IMG/VR virus record: IMGVR_UViG_3300036944_001289 | Location: 124,001-188,000 of that record | Strand: one strand, 5' to 3' | Length of the DNA stretch: 64,000 bases | Shown here: positions 1 to 50,335 of the stretch, in pieces | Layout of the letters: every line of letters starts with the position of its first letter | How positions within the stretch are numbered: position 1 is the stretch's first letter | Made by a program: the position numbers and the translations under genes | Notes under the pieces: model-generated | What the model saw: only the letters and a program-made list of their open reading frames with translations | Told to the model about the DNA's origin: nothing | Database searches by the model: none

Positions 1-281
1 GTTGGTCTAACTACCTTTGGTATATCTTTATCAATATCTAGGTTTACATCAGTAAAACTTACAGATATAAATTTACATATATCAAAAAATAGCCCCGGCT
101 CAAACATACCTGTAGGTGTTATAAAGTATTTTCTATCAGCAACAAACCTCATCCCTTTTTTTCTCATAAAAAAGGCACCTTCGTTCTTTACACTGAAATG
201 TTCCCTTATTTCAGTTAGAAAATCACCAGATAACCTACAAAGTCCACGATTTTTTAGATAATCTATACGTATACTTTTCAT
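1..281 (-). CDS. uvsW: N-terminal fragment of UvsW-like helicase (runs off window edge)
   Basis: Hand-translated open frame from ATG at 281 (TAATG overlap with uvsY stop): MKSIRIDY...EIREHFSVKNEGAFF...ITPTGMFEPGLFFDICKF, resembling the N-terminus of T4-like UvsW; adjacent to uvsY. Confidence 0.6.
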   Translation of the reverse strand, partial: MKSIRIDYLKNRGLCRLSGDFLTEIREHFSVKNEGAFFMRKKGMRFVADRKYFITPTGMFEPGLFFDICKFISVSFTDVNLDIDKDIPKVVRP

Positions 282-676
282 TACAATTGCTCTAATTGCA
301 TTATTTTTATAATATTTGAAACATCGTAGGTCATAGATGAAAATGTCTTTTCTGTCTTTTCAAGAAATTCTATGATTATTTTCTCTTCACCTATTTTAAT
401 ATTCATCTCTCTCATTTTATCATGGTTTTCAGCAGCATTTTCTGCTGTAATCAAACTTAATTTAACAGGTGACTGTGTTTGTAGTTCAGTCATTACAGTT
501 TTTTTAAAAAAATTCTTATCGTTTTCGAGCTTTAATAGATTACGTTTATGATTGATCAGTCTACTAACCCAAAAATGTTTACGAGCAGGTATTCTTAGGC
601 CTACTTCTTTTATGTTAAATTCGTCAATCTTAAGATCTTCTTCGATTTCTTTTATATATCGTTCTAACAATTCCAT
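281..676 (-). CDS. uvsY: recombination mediator UvsY
   Basis: 131 aa helical protein; EEDLKIDEFN...HFWVSRL...IEFLEKT...NIIKIMQLE aligns by eye with T4 UvsY. Confidence 0.75.
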   Translation of the reverse strand: MELLERYIKEIEEDLKIDEFNIKEVGLRIPARKHFWVSRLINHKRNLLKLENDKNFFKKTVMTELQTQSPVKLSLITAENAAENHDKMREMNIKIGEEKIIIEFLEKTEKTFSSMTYDVSNIIKIMQLEQL

Positions 677-681
677 ATTAT

Positions 682-708
682 ATTATAAATATATAATACA
701 ATTATCAA
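682..708 (-). promoter_or_regulatory. sigma70-like promoter of uvsY (TTGATA-N15-TATAAT, 5 nt before ATG)
   Basis: Read directly; overlaps the divergent TAAATA element (686-691) of the 708 ORF. Confidence 0.5.
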
Positions 709-917
709 TGATAAGTTTTAAAAAATTCTATGCTATTTTTAAAGAAGATAGCTCTTACTCAGATGGTACATTAGGGCCTGCTGCAAATGTATCTCACAAT
801 GCAATAGCCAATAGCGATTGGTATGCACCTGGTGACTATAGAATACCAAAAGGTGGTAGAGTATATAGACGCAGTGGTGTTGTAAAGCGTAAAAAGAGAC
901 GTAAATACAAAAAATGA
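708..917 (+). CDS. small basic virion-type protein containing a major-capsid-like YAPGDYRIPK motif
   Basis: Start re-called at ATG 708 (the track ORF extends into uvsY antisense); MISFKKFYAIFKE leader and polybasic C-terminus. Confidence 0.65.
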   Translation: MISFKKFYAIFKEDSSYSDGTLGPAANVSHNAIANSDWYAPGDYRIPKGGRVYRRSGVVKRKKRRKYKK

Positions 918-1339
918 TAACAGATTTTGGTCATTGGATTAATTGCACATCATTAAATGTTGAGGAGTTACCCTATGGCTTTATCTATTTGATAGAGAAT
1001 AAAGTAACAAATAAAAAGTATATAGGTAAAAAACAAATTAAAAGTGTAAAAAAGCTTAAACCATTAAAAGGTAAGAAGAATAAAAGGCATTTTGACGTTG
1101 AGACAGATTGGAAGACTTATACATCTTCTTCTAATGAGGTTAATAGTGACATAGAAAAGTACGGAAAAGATAACTTTTCGTTCTCAATTATAAAATTTTG
1201 TGATTCTAAAAGTGAATTAGCATACTTTGAAGCAAAATTACAATTCGAAGAGAACGTACTATTACGTGAGGATTACTATAACGGTATCATAAATTTGAGA
1301 ATAGGTAAAAATTGTTTTATAAAAAAGTTGAAAACATAA
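914..1339 (+). CDS. GIY-YIG family endonuclease
   Basis: GFIYLIEN...KKYIGKK motif, DWKTY.SSS, conserved E and YYN; type common in T4-like phages. Confidence 0.8.
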   Translation: MITDFGHWINCTSLNVEELPYGFIYLIENKVTNKKYIGKKQIKSVKKLKPLKGKKNKRHFDVETDWKTYTSSSNEVNSDIEKYGKDNFSFSIIKFCDSKSELAYFEAKLQFEENVLLREDYYNGIINLRIGKNCFIKKLKT

Positions 1340-1934: not shown

Positions 1935-2465
1935 ATGAGTATTTTCGATAAAAAAGCTAACCAGATCATTTCATCATTTTTATTAGAAGGTGTAGATTCC
2001 GGATGCACAGTTGTAAAAGTTTCAACACCAACAGGTAAAGTTGATATTAATGCAAAATGTATACAAACGGCTTCAGGTTTATCATACGTGGCTGATGAAG
2101 TTGTTGAAAATATTAATAAAGGTGACGATATTACCGATCTAGTTGTTACCGATGAAGATGAAGAGTTTGATTTTAAGAAAGCTGATCTTGATAAAGACGG
2201 TAAATTATCTTCATATGAAAAAGCACGTGGTGAGGCAGTAGCAGGTGCTAAAGAAGAGAGCGAAGAAGTAGAAGACCCACAACTTAAGAAAATGGGTTTA
2301 GGTAAAGACGCAATTGCCGCTGTAACAGTTGCAGGTAAATTAGCAACAAAAGCAGGCGGGCTTGGTGCTGCAGCACTAACACAAAACAGAATGAATGCTG
2401 CTTACGGTACATTAATGAGAAAAATTGCTAAAAAGGTCACAGATATTTCAAATAAAATACAATGA
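1935..2465 (+). CDS. late protein with EF-hand-like DLDKDGKLSSYE motif
   Basis: TAAATA 5 nt upstream of ATG; leader ending FLLE; DxDxDG loop. Confidence 0.65.
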   Translation: MSIFDKKANQIISSFLLEGVDSGCTVVKVSTPTGKVDINAKCIQTASGLSYVADEVVENINKGDDITDLVVTDEDEEFDFKKADLDKDGKLSSYEKARGEAVAGAKEESEEVEDPQLKKMGLGKDAIAAVTVAGKLATKAGGLGAAALTQNRMNAAYGTLMRKIAKKVTDISNKIQ

Positions 2466-2812
2466 AATTTTTAAGTAAATTAAATTTTTATAAGAATCAG
2501 CTAATTAATGAAGCTGATGAGGAAGCCCCATTACCTCCTAATACTGAAGAGAATCCAACACCTCAAGAAGCTCAACAAACAGAAGAGCAACCAGCTGAAC
2601 CTGAACAACAAACTAAAGAGCTAACACCAGAAGGTGAAGTTCTTTTAATAAGGTTACTTAAGAAAGCATTCGTAATATCACCCAAACCTGAGGATATAGA
2701 GCAGATGTCTGATATTGATAATATCAACGAAAATAATGCAAGAGAATCTCTATCTAAGATAATAGGTTTAATGAAAAAATATTCTACAGATATAGAGTTA
2801 GATATCGATTAA
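2462..2812 (+). CDS. acidic late protein
   Basis: ATGA overlap with previous gene; MKFLSK...LINE leader; E/P-rich linker. Confidence 0.65.
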   Translation: MKFLSKLNFYKNQLINEADEEAPLPPNTEENPTPQEAQQTEEQPAEPEQQTKELTPEGEVLLIRLLKKAFVISPKPEDIEQMSDIDNINENNARESLSKIIGLMKKYSTDIELDID

Positions 2813-2973
2813 TGAAAAAATTTAAAGAGTTTTTTACAGAACGTAAGGTTATAAAACGTAAATTAAAAAAGAAGCCTGCATACTCTAATAATCAGTATAG
2901 AAATACTGTAAATTATATAAATCAACCACCATATGGTGCTGAAGGTAGAACATTAACACCTACAATTAATTAA
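2812..2973 (+). CDS. 53-aa basic protein with T4 IP-like leader (not in ORF track)
   Basis: Hand translation MKKFKEFFTERKVIKRKLKKKPAY...TPTIN*; TAATG overlap with upstream stop. Confidence 0.6.
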   Translation: MKKFKEFFTERKVIKRKLKKKPAYSNNQYRNTVNYINQPPYGAEGRTLTPTIN

Positions 2974-39885: not shown

Positions 39886-41340
39886 TTAGAAGTAAACTGA
39901 CTGATTGCCAGGTGTGAATGCCTGACCGAGTCCGCTTACTATAATAACGTGGTAGTAGAGGTTTGCGCCGAAAATGTTGTCTACAACACCGTAACGGGTT
40001 AATAGACCAACACGTGGTGCAAAGTCGTTCTGACCAATGGTGCGTTGTACCATAACAGGTATGTATGGGCAGTAGATGATACCGGTATCGTAGAATTCTG
40101 GACCCTTGTAGCCAAGTAGTGCATATTCTGGACGATTTGTAGTATCAACGTATTGACCTTCTGTTCTGGTGTCTCTGTAAACCTGGAAACGACCACCAAG
40201 GCTACCTACCTTAGCAACACCGACTGGCTGTGTGTTAACATTGCCTTGAACTGGTACCCATTGGAATTCAGGTAGCATTTCAAGGATTGCGCAAACGCGA
40301 GGTGTTGCAACAATGAAGTTTGCAGCGCCACGACGATTACGTACAGCAATACGGTTAGCTTCGATAATTAGTCTTTGATAGAAGTCACGGTTACGTTCGA
40401 CCAACCAACGGCCATCTGCTGAAGCAGGAGACCAGATAGAATAACCAACGCCAGCACCTGCATTGAGGGCGACTTGGATCATTCTAATAATCATTTCACG
40501 GTCGATTTCGGCCTGAATTTCATAGCTCATAGCGTTTGTTAATTCAGTGTCGATATCAATACCGTTCATGTTCTTGAGGTCTTGCTCAAGCTCTACGGAC
40601 CAGCGGGCGCCTAAGCGTCTTGTACCAGCTTCAACAGCAGTCTTTTCAAATGAAACTTCAAATGTCGGAATGTTTTCCGAGATTTCAAAGCTTGATAGAA
40701 GAGCTGCTACACCGTTATTTTGACCGTTATTAATAAAATTAACGGGCAATGCAGAGCTACCAGAAAGGTAGGCTGCGGATGTACCGGTGTAAGCACTGTT
40801 AAGGTACTGATAGCCTGCTTCCTGACCAGCTGCAGAGGTAAGAATACCAGACTGACCGGCAGGAGCGTTGCCATTAGAACCTAAAGTGCTACCTGTGTAG
40901 CGATAACGAAGAGCGAATGCGAGACCTACTGGACCAGCCATTGGTTGAACGCCGACAATTTCGTTAGAGATAAGCTCTGGGAAAGTACGGCGGATCATGG
41001 GGATCAAGATTTTTGGAAGACGGTAGTCACCAGGTGCGTATGTATCTGTACCAGGTGTACCGGTAGAGTTCCATGAGTTCATACCTGCTGTGCCACCAAC
41101 TGCACCACCGAAACCGGCAGTATTAACTGTACCGGATGGGTTGTAGTTAGGACCAGCTTCGTTAACCATACACCATTGCTCTTGGTTTTCCAATAGCATT
41201 GCTGTATTTAAACGGGTGTGGTTGTCTTCAATCGGAGCAACGTTCTTAGAAGAGTAATCCAAAACTGGACCCCACTTCTCAAGAAGCGCCTTTGCTCTTG
41301 ATTCATTGATATATGCTTGTGTAGGACGAATAGTGTTCAT
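39886..41340 (-). CDS. major capsid protein gp23
   Basis: LLEKW.PVL, TA.LLENQ, VGVQPMAGPVGLAFALR, RRL.ARWSVELEQDLK, EIDRE, YCPYIP, TRYG. Confidence 0.97.
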   Translation of the reverse strand: MNTIRPTQAYINESRAKALLEKWGPVLDYSSKNVAPIEDNHTRLNTAMLLENQEQWCMVNEAGPNYNPSGTVNTAGFGGAVGGTAGMNSWNSTGTPGTDTYAPGDYRLPKILIPMIRRTFPELISNEIVGVQPMAGPVGLAFALRYRYTGSTLGSNGNAPAGQSGILTSAAGQEAGYQYLNSAYTGTSAAYLSGSSALPVNFINNGQNNGVAALLSSFEISENIPTFEVSFEKTAVEAGTRRLGARWSVELEQDLKNMNGIDIDTELTNAMSYEIQAEIDREMIIRMIQVALNAGAGVGYSIWSPASADGRWLVERNRDFYQRLIIEANRIAVRNRRGAANFIVATPRVCAILEMLPEFQWVPVQGNVNTQPVGVAKVGSLGGRFQVYRDTRTEGQYVDTTNRPEYALLGYKGPEFYDTGIIYCPYIPVMVQRTIGQNDFAPRVGLLTRYGVVDNIFGANLYYHVIIVSGLGQAFTPGNQSVYF

Positions 41341-41420: not shown

Positions 41421-42275
41421 TTAGTACTTACCTAATTCTTTTAGGTAAGGAGAAATTTGTTGCACGCCTTCTGTGATCACTTCTTCTGTCTGTTCTGTAA
41501 CAACATGATCAACATCTTGGCGCTCATTTAGTGCTTCTTCTTTCAAGACTTCGAGTCTATCTGTTAATTTCTTATTGAAGAGTTTGACTGTGTAATCAAA
41601 ATTTTCATTTATAAATTCCAGCGATTTGCCAGCCATTACTTTCTTAACGTAATATTTTTCTTGATCGTTAAGTTTGGCGGTTTTTTGTTCTAGAATCAAA
41701 CCAGCTTGTATTTGCTGTAGGGATTCTTTTAACATAGCGTTTTCGCTTTGGATAGACTCAAGCTTTTTAGAAGCTTCATTTATTTGGTTTTTACCATCAA
41801 GCACTGCATCTTTGATAGAATCTCTTTCAAGTGCAGATGTGACAGCTAAAGTGTTTCGTAGTGATTCAAGTAGTTTGGCTGCTTTCTTGTTTTTAACAGC
41901 TTCTTGAATGTCAGCAGCAGGTACTATCTCTTCAAGATAAGCTTCGAGATAGTCACTGATAGATTCAACTAAGGTTTGTTTAAACTTCTTAGCATCTTCA
42001 TTTAGTGTTCTCTCATACTTAGAAACAACCTTCTTAAGTTTGTTTGCTCTATCTAGTTCAATAGCTTCTACTACCTTTTCTAATTTAATTGTATGATCTT
42101 TATCAATAGCTTCGAGTAGTTGCTCGAGCTTCTTAGTATAAAGTTCATCTTGTTCAGCAAGAGCTTTCTCAACATGGAGTTCAACTTTTGCTTTTACCTT
42201 TGATTCAATAGCCTCTTGAATCATTTTTAAAGATTCAGGTGAGAGGTCTTTTAATTGTTCGTTAATATTCTCCAT
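41421..42275 (-). CDS. prohead core scaffold gp22
   Basis: Acidic coiled coil between gp21 and gp23, multiple (L/I)xE sites. Confidence 0.85.
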   Translation of the reverse strand: MENINEQLKDLSPESLKMIQEAIESKVKAKVELHVEKALAEQDELYTKKLEQLLEAIDKDHTIKLEKVVEAIELDRANKLKKVVSKYERTLNEDAKKFKQTLVESISDYLEAYLEEIVPAADIQEAVKNKKAAKLLESLRNTLAVTSALERDSIKDAVLDGKNQINEASKKLESIQSENAMLKESLQQIQAGLILEQKTAKLNDQEKYYVKKVMAGKSLEFINENFDYTVKLFNKKLTDRLEVLKEEALNERQDVDHVVTEQTEEVITEGVQQISPYLKELGKY

Positions 42276-42474: not shown

Positions 42475-43137
42475 TTATAATTTATTTATAAAACTAAGAA
42501 TCGCGCTACGTAGATATTGATCTTTATCGGAGCGAGGTAAAGTTATTAACTTCTTTTCAAAAGTATCATATAATTCTTCATAATGTCCATTCTCTCTCAA
42601 TACATATTGTTTAGATTCGAGAATACCATTAACAAACGCTTTACCGAAACTTGGATCTGCAACGCAATCGATTGCTACTAGTCTAAAATCTTTTACTCTA
42701 TTACAACCGTTTGATTCAGGTATTAATTGCCCTAAAGCTCTAGAACTCATACCAACTTTAACACCGTCGTTAATAAGTGAGCGAACTATAAGACCTGTAG
42801 GTGTTGATAGTACTTTACTTTTACCGTAAAATACATTACCATCTCTTTTTAGTTCTGTAACTAAGTGACAGACTCTAGATAGATCTACGTCAGCTGTGGT
42901 AGGGTGATTAAGTTCACCCATTGCTCTACCAGGCTTAATCATATCATCTTCGTAGCGCTGAACTTCACGGACCATTTCATCGATAGGATATAGACGCTTA
43001 TTTCTATTGACACCCTCTGCCATCATATATGGCCCCTTTATATAGAGTGTTCTAGGTTCATTAGCATTACGCTCTTCAACGATATAAGAAAAATCGTTGT
43101 TATTAGTAGGTGTCTCAACTATTAGTCTAAAACTCAT
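42475..43137 (-). CDS. prohead protease gp21
   Basis: NRNKRLYP, GELNHP, GMSSRALG, DCVADPS. Confidence 0.95.
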   Translation of the reverse strand: MSFRLIVETPTNNNDFSYIVEERNANEPRTLYIKGPYMMAEGVNRNKRLYPIDEMVREVQRYEDDMIKPGRAMGELNHPTTADVDLSRVCHLVTELKRDGNVFYGKSKVLSTPTGLIVRSLINDGVKVGMSSRALGQLIPESNGCNRVKDFRLVAIDCVADPSFGKAFVNGILESKQYVLRENGHYEELYDTFEKKLITLPRSDKDQYLRSAILSFINKL

Positions 43138-43171
43138 TTAATATTATTTATATGATGGTGTATCATATCCA

Positions 43172-43621
43172 TTAAGTTTTTATATTTAATTCTTTTTCTG
43201 TTAGTATAATAAACTCCATATTCTTTCTTTTAGCCCATTCTTTAGCTGCTATCCATTTTGCTTGATTGGTAATCCAGGTAGTTTGTTCGTATAGTATTGT
43301 TTTTTTATGTTTACCTTTTGTAGGTACTGGTTGTACCGTTTGTTTGCTAGGCTTAATTTCTATCAAAAGTTTTTGTTTATTACCGTCTTTATCTTTAAAG
43401 ACAACAAAATTATCTACAAAATATCTGTGAACTTTCTGATCTAAAGGGTTGATATATGGTACAATTATATTTTCACTACCCCATGCTAATATATTAGGAT
43501 TTGTATCAGCCCATCTAAAGAATTTTAACTCCCAACCACTACGATATACAGGATTGTTCTTTCCTAGATATTTTTCTATATTAATCGGTCGGTAAATTCC
43601 TTGCTTATATTTATTGGCCAT
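43172..43621 (-). CDS. head completion nuclease gp4
   Basis: YRSGWE, WGSE, HRYFVD, IEIKP, KW.AAKEW. Confidence 0.95.
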   Translation of the reverse strand: MANKYKQGIYRPINIEKYLGKNNPVYRSGWELKFFRWADTNPNILAWGSENIIVPYINPLDQKVHRYFVDNFVVFKDKDGNKQKLLIEIKPSKQTVQPVPTKGKHKKTILYEQTTWITNQAKWIAAKEWAKRKNMEFIILTEKELNIKT

Positions 43622-49792: not shown

Positions 49793-49801
49793 TGTTATTA
49801 T

Positions 49802-50335
49802 TTATATAAGATAAATAGCGCTTGTGCTATCTACAAAAACATTATTATCGTTATCTACACATATGCTTAATAAAGACTCTGGCGTTAGGAATAACGATCT
49901 ACCATCTGGTCTTCTATATGTAAAAGATGATACGGGTCTAATATAGGTTATTATTAATGGTGTTGTTACAGATATTACAGTACTATTTGAAGATAAATAT
50001 GGTGAAAATAACGTTTTAGAGCTCTCTGAGTACCCAGCAACATTATATGGTATGAATTGTATATCACAATCACCTATTAATCTAGGTACATTTATTAAAA
50101 TATTATTTTTGTCTATAACAGTATAATCAACTAAAGAACCTGTAATAGGCTGCTGTCTTTTGAATATGTTTATACTAGTTAGTGATGGTAAAGAAAATGT
50201 ATCGTTACTCGATAACATAACATTTAAAAGCTTATCAAAATTATATCCCTGTAAACCTACAACACTTAAATTATTTGTGTTTGTGGTTAACGTATCGTAT
50301 AATTTTATACCATCGACTGTAATGCTGGTTATCAT
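49802..50335 (-). CDS. structural protein downstream of gp15
   Basis: Start re-called at ATG 50335 (ATGA overlap with gp15 stop); Ig-like T/S/N-rich sequence. Confidence 0.55.
   Translation of the reverse strand: MITSITVDGIKLYDTLTTNTNNLSVVGLQGYNFDKLLNVMLSSNDTFSLPSLTSINIFKRQQPITGSLVDYTVIDKNNILINVPRLIGDCDIQFIPYNVAGYSESSKTLFSPYLSSNSTVISVTTPLIITYIRPVSSFTYRRPDGRSLFLTPESLLSICVDNDNNVFVDSTSAIYLI

What the first reader, a model, noticed from the sequence alone, without database searches (positions are those of the whole stretch)
708..917. 69-aa basic protein carries a copy of a major-capsid motif (YAPGDYR[I/L]PK)
Seen: the small ORF has DWYAPGDYRIPK (822-851) and gp23 has DTYAPGDYRLPK (41011-41040), just before its conserved LIPMIRRTFPELI helix. 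Apart from I/L, the codon differences are synonymous (TAT/TAC, AGA/CGT), which points to selection on the peptide. The small protein also has an IP-like leader (MISFKKFYAIFKE) and a RRSGVVKRKKRRKYKK tail. Inference: it is a capsid N-arm mimic that docks on the inner shell and tethers DNA, or it modulates assembly.
Basis: partly seen in the sequence, partly recalled or inferred. Interest (0 to 1): 0.7.

Follow-up and report, generated by a model that had tools for sequence, protein, structure and literature searches.

The report
Small copy of capsid protein's N-terminus
This T4-like phage has a 69-residue basic protein that combines a T4-style capsid-targeting leader with a copy of the flexible N-terminal segment of its own major capsid protein; T4 (gene 61.1) and a cyanophage have counterparts that each copy their own capsid protein, but what the protein does is still inferred.

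Summary
ORF 708-917 (+) and gp23 (39886-41340, -) share 10 of 12 residues. The differing codons are synonymous.

The likeness is not limited to a motif. The small protein has four parts:
- a leader resembling the T4 capsid-targeting sequence;
- a Glu cleavage-type site like gp23's;
- a copy of the N-terminal arm of mature gp23;
- a basic tract.

A profile built only from small-protein homologues hits the gp23 arm in all 27 records tested, and nothing else besides the small gene itself. The family has at least 359 clusters at 50% identity. Of 153 representatives, 142 keep D-[FW]-Y-A-P-G-D-x-R-x-P-K.

The copy tracks its own genome's gp23:
- 13 pairs from three clades: 0 of 200,000 permutations reach the observed score;
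- window clade alone: 5 of 5,040.

Synonymous sites have diverged, so this is not recent gene conversion. T4 gene 61.1 (annotated hypothetical) and cyanophage S-SSM4 CYXG_00152 are built the same way against their own gp23.

Best reading, inferred: a prohead-targeted, protease-processed internal peptide that uses gp23's own assembly determinants. In relatives the same module is fused to extra domains.

Docking on the inner shell is untested. Complex prediction gave no answer. I classify it as a new variant of a known kind.

The parts
684..691 (+). TATAAATA, a T4 late-promoter-like element 16 nt upstream of the ATG
   Evidence: One search gives the position. The total count in the window is at chance level (19 found, 20.6 expected). 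However, 8 of the 19 lie 5-16 nt upstream of an ORF ATG, against 1.4 expected. These include gp21 and ORF 1935. Relatives carry TATAAATA or TATAAGTA 5 nt before their ATG. Late transcription is inferred, not shown.
708..917 (+). Small-protein gene: 69 aa, pI 10.3, stop included. The stop TGA (915-917) overlaps the ATG (914-916) of the next gene.
   Evidence: The protein is conserved while synonymous codons change.
708..746 (+). Leader, aa 1-13 (MISFKKFYAIFKE): capsid-targeting-sequence-like, ending in a Glu that aligns with gp23's cleavage Glu
   Evidence: M1, I2, S3, F4, K5, F7, Y8 and E13 are invariant in close homologues. T4 CTS is MKTYQEFIAE; its residues 4 and 7 act in targeting and 8 and 10 in processing. 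Relatives start MKTFKEYVMQE, MITFNQFCSE and MKTFKEFIQE. Cleavage is inferred.
747..851 (+). Arm copy, aa 14-48, acidic (pI 4.6), ending in DWYAPGDYRIPK
   Evidence: It matches gp23 aa about 78-110.
852..914 (+). Basic tract, aa 49-69 (12 K/R, no D/E). It contains VYRRSGVV, the counterpart of gp23 MIRRTFPE, then KRKKRRKYKK.
   Evidence: for composition. In relatives the K/R tract lies between the ...R.PK.LG element and a C-terminal IPVQRRALPGL or PLIMRRIAPELL element that resembles gp23 IPMIRRTFPEL.
39886..41340 (-). gp23, the major capsid protein (484 aa). No gp24 paralogue was detected in the 209-kb genome.
40987..41190 (-). gp23 aa 51-118: end of the propeptide (ENQEQWCMVNE), the presumed cleavage site E61|A62, the hypervariable arm, DTYAPGDYRLPK and ILIPMIRR. 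This is the template that the small protein copies.
   Evidence: It maps onto T4 gp23 aa about 50-101; R117-R118 correspond to T4 R100-R101. T4 aa 66-105 is the flexible segment.
41421..42275 (-). gp22 scaffolding protein, the candidate shared partner
   Evidence: Pfam T4_CASP. The partner role is inferred.
42475..43137 (-). gp21 prohead protease, the presumed processing enzyme
   Evidence: Pfam Peptidase_S77, E 8e-30. TATAAATA lies 7 nt upstream.
281..676 (-). uvsY homologue, the left synteny anchor of the locus
914..1339 (+). 141-aa SegE-type GIY-YIG domain protein, the right synteny anchor

Best explanation
The gene encodes a T4-type internal head protein whose body is a paralogous copy of the flexible N-terminal assembly segment of the phage's own major capsid protein.

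Proposed mechanism:
1. It is transcribed late.
2. The leader (aromatic residues at positions 4 and 7) and the arm copy carry it into the assembling prohead. They do so by making the contacts that gp23's own propeptide end and N-terminal arm make there, most likely with the acidic scaffolding core (gp22 and partners).
3. The prohead protease gp21 cuts after Glu13, as it cuts gp23 after Glu61.
4. The 56-residue product, an acidic arm plus a +12 tail, stays in the head on the DNA.

In relatives the same module is fused to other domains and would then serve as a portable loading tag.

Shown here: the architecture, the homology to the gp23 arm, the family-wide conservation, the lineage-specific tracking of gp23, the conserved locus, and parallel cases in T4 and a cyanophage.

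Inferred: late expression, targeting, cleavage, the identity of the partner, and retention in the virion.
For: Architecture and conservation.

The small-protein profiles hit gp23 as the only other place in the window's own genome (E 3.6e-5), in 5 large related records and in 21 of 21 further records.

Tracking of the genome's own gp23:
- G006: GGSLGTFQTSDWKDNPSGTPG against gp23 GGSLGTFQTSNWVNNPAGTPG.
- G008 and G009: GNQFPSQND is shared.
- G016: NEDNTAGPGGVFG...FNPPG against NEDNTAASGGVFG...FNPPG.
- Permutation tests: 5 of 720, 5 of 5,040 and 0 of 200,000.

Identical residues mostly use different synonymous codons and nucleotide identity is 55-67%, so the similarity is maintained at protein level.

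All variants, 69 to 343 aa, are positional orthologues between uvsY and the GIY-YIG gene.

The leader fits the T4 CTS and its mapped determinants. In T4 those four positions are the ones gp61.1 shares with gp23 F59, F62, L63 and E65.

The copied stretch coincides with T4 gp23* 66-105. That segment is flexible, lies inside the prohead and is presumed to contact the core.

The genome has gp21, gp22 and gp20.

TATAAATA elements are enriched just upstream of start codons, this gene included.

Fusions to GNAT, DUF192, DUF5661 and a weak ART-PolyVal match occur on either side of the module. T4 internal proteins are likewise diverse cargo behind a conserved targeting sequence.

Parallel cases:
- T4 gp61.1 against T4 gp23: E 6.7e-6.
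- Four further T4-group phages: z = 12-19 against shuffles.
- Cyanophage S-SSM4 CYXG_00152: E 1e-11.
Against: There is no direct evidence of expression, cleavage or presence in virions. No RNA run was listed.

The window's own pair is not its best match among clade gp23 arms (rank 4 of 6). In this sublineage only the core motif is tightly shared.

T4 gp61.1 lies in an early replication-gene cluster, with a GAGG ribosome site and no TATAAATA within about 100 nt. It is not mentioned in the main text of a T4 head mass-spectrometry study.

hhalign does not link the window family to gp61.1 beyond the leader.

P3 of the proposed site is Phe, not the Leu/Ile of the T4 consensus (the consensus is from my own knowledge).

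A 6-kDa unfolded peptide might escape through prohead pores, as scaffold fragments do.

The complex prediction was uninformative.
Confidence: 0.5

Rival explanations
1. Assembly modulator or decoy. The free copy of gp23's N-terminal segment competes with gp23 for the scaffolding core, the protease or neighbouring subunits. It thereby tunes nucleation, head size or the timing of maturation, and is not kept in the virion.
For: It rests on the same mimicry and co-variation. In T4, mutations in this gp23 segment (A66D, A94V, G97S) change head length, which is attributed to contacts with the core. The basic tract is an expanded version of gp23's invariant RR and would bind an acidic core.
Against: Fusions to enzyme-like domains fit cargo loading better than pure regulation. 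The CTS-like leader in T4 is a packaging signal.
Confidence: 0.2
2. The peptide is a structural spare arm that stays bound to the mature shell, for instance at sites lacking a gp23 arm near vertices or the portal, while its basic tail holds DNA against the inner wall.
For: Many members keep both halves of the gp23 segment (...R.PK.LG and IP.QRR.FP.L) separated by a K/R loop, as if both dock and the loop protrudes. P1 DarA-Hdf shows that protease-processed, DNA-binding proteins can sit on the inner capsid surface at penton-hexon junctions. No gp24 paralogue was detected here.
Against: In T4 the equivalent gp23 segment ends up on the outer surface after expansion. Its mature docking sites would therefore not be reachable from inside. 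All regular sites are filled by gp23's own arms. The prediction gave no answer.
Confidence: 0.12
3. Anti-defence decoy. The protein imitates the part of the capsid protein that a host immune sensor recognises, and so has to track its own gp23.
For: The copied gp23 stretch is the most variable part of an otherwise 75-84% identical protein, and the copy follows it. From my own knowledge, not tested here: the T4 Gol peptide that triggers Lit lies just after this segment, and other defences sense capsid proteins.
Against: A decoy would not need a CTS-like leader, a copy of the cleavage site or a polybasic tract. No defence context was examined. A mimic could just as well trigger a sensor.
Confidence: 0.08
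4. Chance resemblance, or a decaying remnant of a partial gp23 duplication with no function.
For: A single 10-of-12 match taken alone is only moderately unlikely.
Against: There are hundreds of conserved homologues. The protein is conserved across synonymous change. The locus is conserved. Independent parallels exist in T4 and a cyanophage.
Confidence: 0.02

Closest known systems
T4 internal proteins IPI, IPII, IPIII and Alt, which carry the capsid-targeting sequence MKTYQEFIAE
   Same: A short N-terminal leader with aromatic residues at positions 4 and 7 that ends in Glu. A basic body. Encoded outside the head gene cluster. A variable family behind a conserved leader. The genome has the gp21 protease and the gp22 core.
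   Different: The body here is a copy of the capsid protein's own N-terminal arm and co-varies with it. No such relation is reported for the IPs in the papers read. Here the leader is 13 residues and P3 is Phe. Packaging and cleavage are not shown.
T4 gp61.1 (NP_049649, hypothetical; phrog_1823, with long forms in phrog_2086)
   Same: The same build: MKTFKEFIKE leader, an E-D|M-V-A-G-D start comparable to E-E|N-V-A-G-D in this clade, a copy of its own gp23 arm (TSGAV..GP), then a K-rich patch. It occurs in 1,385 phage records.
   Different: There is no significant profile match to the window family beyond the leader. It has a different genomic neighbourhood, between 41 or 61.2 and 61 rather than between uvsY and the GIY-YIG gene. 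The T4 tail is mixed basic and acidic. No function is known for either protein.
Cyanophage S-SSM4 CYXG_00152 (288 aa, annotated 'major head protein')
   Same: A short leader ending in Glu, a near-exact copy of its own gp23 arm, then a basic stretch at the point where gp23 has LIRR.
   Different: It carries about 220 further residues of unknown function. The arm sequence is unrelated to the window's.
Phage P1 DarA-Hdf and encapsulin cargo-loading peptides (analogues, not relatives)
   Same: Proteins or tags that bind the inside of an HK97-fold shell. DarA is cut by the prohead protease, and the DarA-Hdf pair binds DNA and leaves with it. The encapsulin comparison is from my own knowledge.
   Different: There is no sequence relation. 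Neither is reported, in the paper read, to copy the capsid protein's own sequence.

Membership tests
T4-type CTS-bearing internal head proteins | N-terminal leader of about 10 residues with targeting residues at positions 4 and 7 and processing residues at 8 and 10 (Glu) | tested here: inconclusive
   F4 and F7 are present and invariant. The Glu is at position 13, not 10, and P3 is Phe. Relatives fit exactly (MITFNQFCSE).
T4-type CTS-bearing internal head proteins | Cleaved by the prohead protease gp21 | not testable with these tools
   gp21 is encoded (Peptidase_S77). The site aligns with gp23's cleavage Glu.
T4-type CTS-bearing internal head proteins | Present in the prohead core and mature head | not testable with these tools
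   The phage is uncultured and comes from a shale gas metagenome.
T4-type CTS-bearing internal head proteins | Basic protein | tested here: met
   pI 10.3 for the whole protein. The tail has 12 K/R and no D/E.
T4 gp61.1 family (phrog_1823 / phrog_2086) | Significant match to the family profile | tested here: not met
   No PHROG hit for the window protein. hhalign aligns the leader only, probability 2.5%. A relative, P0011, hits profile positions 1-15 at E 0.005.
T4 gp61.1 family (phrog_1823 / phrog_2086) | Architecture: CTS-like leader, then a copy of the genome's own gp23 arm, then a basic patch | tested here: met
Major capsid protein gp23 (Pfam PF07068, HK97 fold) | Contains the capsid-protein body | tested here: not met
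   No Pfam or NCBIfam hit. Only gp23 aa about 51-118 are mirrored. 'Major capsid protein' labels on such genes are misleading.

The most novel reading that the evidence does not exclude
Imitating the capsid protein's own propeptide and N-arm junction may be the general way that T4-like phages address proteins to the prohead. On this reading the classic 10-residue T4 capsid-targeting sequence is a minimal imitation of gp23 residues 56-65. Its four critical positions (4, 7, 8, 10) match gp23 F59, F62, L63 and E65. The gp61.1-like family would be the full-length form, which has co-evolved with gp23 across the whole superfamily and been reused repeatedly as a lineage-specific loading tag for injected enzymes.
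Probability: 0.3. Interest if true: 0.8.

Novelty: new variant of a known kind. Interest (0 to 1): 0.68.

Why it matters
How T4's capsid protein and its internal proteins dock onto the scaffolding core is still unresolved. The gp23 segment involved is invisible in prohead structures.

A small, dispensable-looking protein that copies exactly that segment, follows it through evolution, and has a counterpart in T4 itself (gene 61.1) offers a handle on the question. Tagging, deletion, arm swaps and cross-linking in T4 could test it.

The result would also give a function to a widespread family of hypothetical proteins. It would correct their 'major capsid protein' labels. It may also yield lineage-matched tags for loading cargo into phage heads.

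Tried and rejected
- Phage-collection searches (megablast and tblastn) with the locus and the small protein found nothing.
- Pfam, PHROGs and NCBIfam have no model for the module.
- hhalign of the family against T4 gp61.1 was significant only for the leader.
The run with window sequences only (gp23 aa 111-484 in two copies, plus the peptide) returned 'no answer', score 0.00, with low confidence in both folds. It is not used as evidence.
- Searches for sequencing runs listed only DNA metagenomes and no RNA run.
- A self-versus-non-self test inside the T4 group was uninformative because those gp23 arms are nearly identical (481 of 720). gp23 extraction failed for one phage, Cronuts, which I dropped.
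- The overall count of TATAAATA is at chance level. Only its position relative to start codons is informative.
- I considered testing gp22 against arm co-variation. I dropped it because gp22 is adjacent to the 5' end of gene 23, so linkage would confound the result.
- A gp24 paralogue as the user of a spare arm was ruled out: none was detected.
- Literature searches for gp61.1 and DUF5661 found no functional work.

Full report
**Setting**

The window is bases 124001-188000 of a 209,282-bp viral record with direct terminal repeats. Near-identical DNA occurs in shale gas metagenomes.

It is a divergent T4-like myovirus:
- gp23 is ORF 39886-41340 (-), only about 34% identical to cyanophage gp23 and 31% to T4 gp23.
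- gp22 (T4_CASP), gp21 (Peptidase_S77) and gp20 (Portal_T4) lie next to it.
- No gp24 paralogue was detected in the genome.

**Observation**

ORF 708-917 (+) encodes the 69 residues quoted. DWYAPGDYRIPK is aa 37-48. gp23 has DTYAPGDYRLPK at aa 99-110 on the minus strand, followed by ILIPMIRRTFPELI.

No other ORF in the window reaches more than 7 of 12 identities. In 300 shuffles the best value never exceeded 9.

**What the gene is**

Four close protein clusters keep the motif. A scan of viral contigs found 20 loci. In these a conserved module is attached to different N-terminal parts:
- proteins of 69 aa;
- proteins of 76-93 aa;
- proteins of 132-142 aa with a DUF5661 domain;
- one protein of 343 aa.

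The module reads E-D-E-N-T-V-G-G-G-A-L-G-P-A-A-A-x-G-H...D-W-Y-A-P-G-D-Y-R-x-P...Y-S-R-x-G-x-V, followed by a K/R run.

In every case the gene sits between a uvsY homologue and a small SegE-type GIY-YIG protein, so these are positional orthologues.

A profile search of 1.84 billion cluster representatives found 359 clusters at E <= 1e-3 and 42 at E <= 1e-10. Most are 57-125 aa. Of 153 representatives, 142 keep D-[FW]-Y-A-P-G-D-[ASTY]-R-[IVLM]-P-K-x-L-G.

Many end in a second element that resembles gp23 IPMIRRTFPEL, with the K/R run between the two elements. Examples are IPVQRRALPGL, PLIMRRIAPELL and FPIQRRTFPNL.

Some members carry extra domains on either side of the module: GNAT, DUF192, DUF5661 or a weak ART-PolyVal match.

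No Pfam or NCBIfam model covers the module.

**Relation to gp23**

In 80 gp23 relatives (70-82% identical) the region reads D-x-Y-A-x-[GN]-D-x-R-L-P-K-I-L-I-P-M-I-R-R. The 40 or so residues before it are the most variable part of the protein.

Profiles built only from small proteins hit the gp23 arm as the only other place in three sets:
- the window's own genome (profile positions 8-40, E 3.6e-5);
- five large related records;
- 21 of 21 further records.

The similarity therefore spans the arm, not just twelve residues. It also includes the end of the propeptide and the cleavage Glu. Examples, small protein against gp23:
- QFCSE|MNVAGG against KWCME|ANTAGP;
- KILNE|DNTAGPGGVFG against CMVNE|DNTAASGGVFG.

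**Co-variation**

Seven genomes of this clade hold both genes. The small protein follows lineage-specific features of its own gp23:
- GNQFPSQND in G008 and G009;
- GGSLGTFQTS.W..NP.GTPG in G006;
- FNPPG in G016.

The summed self-scores exceed almost all permutations: 5 of 720 for six pairs and 5 of 5,040 for seven.

After one ancient duplication with independent drift, self pairs should score no higher than non-self pairs. The copies must therefore be kept alike, either by selection or by old conversion events followed by selection. Identical residues mostly use different codons. In G009, 34 residues are identical and 21 of them differ synonymously. Nucleotide identity is 55-67%. This rules out recent gene conversion.

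One caveat applies. The window's own pair ranks only fourth of six. In its sublineage the N-terminal half of the module has diverged, and mainly the core motif is shared.

**Other T4-like clades**

Searching T4 with its own gp23 aa 50-110 gives one extra hit, gene 61.1 (E 6.7e-6). It is 54 aa and annotated hypothetical: MKTFKEFIKEDMVAGDSGGNPENISIGTTSGAVVNKGPEQIPKKKKEESKEKEE.

In five more T4-group phages the gp61.1 homologue was again the only extra hit. In four of them, as in T4, it scored z = 12-19 against shuffles. gp23 extraction failed for the fifth, Cronuts.

In cyanophage S-SSM4 the extra hit is CYXG_00152 (E 1e-11). It begins MNVNE|SPTMSVGTGGFSGSSAATGPTAGFDPVL-DFRKK, against gp23 MLTE|APTMAAGTGGFSGSATATGPVAGFDPVL-ISLIRR.

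The arm sequences of the three clades are unrelated to each other, yet each small protein matches its own gp23:
- mean scores are 73-128 within a clade and 26-32 across clades;
- 0 of 200,000 permutations reach the observed sum.

Some database records already label these genes 'major capsid (domain-containing) protein'. Automatic annotation has therefore seen the likeness. I found no functional study.

**The leader**

The T4 capsid-targeting sequence is MKTYQEFIAE. It carries internal proteins into the scaffolding core and is removed by gp21. Its residues 4 and 7 matter for targeting, and 8 and 10 for processing.

T4 gp61.1 (MKTFKEFIKE) and members of the window family (MKTFKEFIQE, MITFNQFCSE, MKTFKEYVMQE) fit this pattern. 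The window protein has invariant F4 and F7, with Glu at position 13.

In the T4 alignment those four positions are exactly the ones shared with gp23 F59, F62, L63 and E65.

**Mapping onto T4 structures**

Window gp23 R117-R118 align with T4 R100-R101. The copied stretch therefore corresponds to T4 gp23 aa about 56-105.

In T4, residues 66-105 behave as follows:
- they are disordered in the unexpanded head and point inward;
- they are thought to contact the scaffolding core;
- they contain head-length mutations;
- on expansion they move to the outer surface and form the N-fist and N-arm.

**Expression**

The total number of TATAAATA sites in the window is at chance level. However, 8 of 19 lie 5-16 nt upstream of a start codon, against 1.4 expected. 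This gene, gp21 and ORF 1935 are among them.

Relatives carry the element 5 nt before the ATG and have no ribosome-binding site. This suggests late, nearly leaderless transcripts, but it is an inference. No RNA run was listed.

**Interpretation**

The most economical reading is a CTS-bearing, protease-processed internal head peptide. It would enter the prohead by presenting the same determinants as gp23's own N-terminal segment. Its basic tract is an expansion of gp23's invariant RR. That tract would bind first the acidic core and later the DNA.

The fusions suggest that the module also works as a loading tag.

The complex prediction gave no answer, so none of these is tested structurally.

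**Verdict**

The mimicry and the leader are supported. The docking mechanism remains open. I rate it a new variant of a known kind, and its counterpart in T4 makes it directly testable.

Noticed in passing
window 1935-2973 (+): Three more small genes follow in the same orientation, and their N-termini look like protease-processed leaders. They are MSIFDKKANQIISSFLLE|G (176 aa, TATAAATA 5 nt upstream), MKFLSKLNFYKNQLINE|A (116 aa, acidic) and MKKFKEFFTE|RK (53 aa). The last has F4, F7, F8 and E10, an exact fit to the T4 capsid-targeting pattern. This may be a cluster of head-core or internal proteins.
   Followed up: partly
window 914-917: The stop codon of the small gene (TGA, 915-917) overlaps the ATG (914-916) of the GIY-YIG gene in an ATGA arrangement. 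This suggests translational coupling.
   Followed up: no
window, whole; e.g. 43145-43152, 49799-49806, 1922-1929: TATAAATA sits 5-9 nt before many start codons, and no Shine-Dalgarno sequence is visible. Late mRNAs in this phage may be nearly leaderless.
   Followed up: partly
window 43172-43621 (-): A 149-aa ORF with a TnsA-like endonuclease N-terminal domain (E 4e-20) lies inside the head gene cluster, just upstream of gp21. It is probably a mobile endonuclease insertion.
   Followed up: no
own genome (G000), 209,282 bp: No gp24 (vertex protein) paralogue was found with gp23 or with Pfam Gp23. gp23 presumably also forms the pentamers.
   Followed up: yes
window 40987-41157 (-) and L025-L104: The first 40 or so residues of mature gp23 are hypervariable among proteins that are otherwise 75-84% identical. 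In T4 this segment becomes surface-exposed after expansion.
   Followed up: partly
L008:2304-3332 (+): A 343-aa positional orthologue carries the module at its C-terminus behind about 280 residues that match no Pfam or PHROG family.
   Followed up: partly
NC_020875.1 137860-138726; several gp61.1 homologues in GenBank: Genes that only mirror the N-terminal arm of gp23 are annotated 'major head protein' or 'major capsid protein'. These labels are misleading.
   Followed up: yes
L124, L125, L126, L127 (T4-group phages): Long forms of gp61.1 (148-163 aa, phrog_2086) have a conserved N-terminal domain of unknown function ahead of an LFED|MVAGD-type junction and the arm copy. This parallels the C-terminal-module fusions of the window clade.
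   Followed up: no
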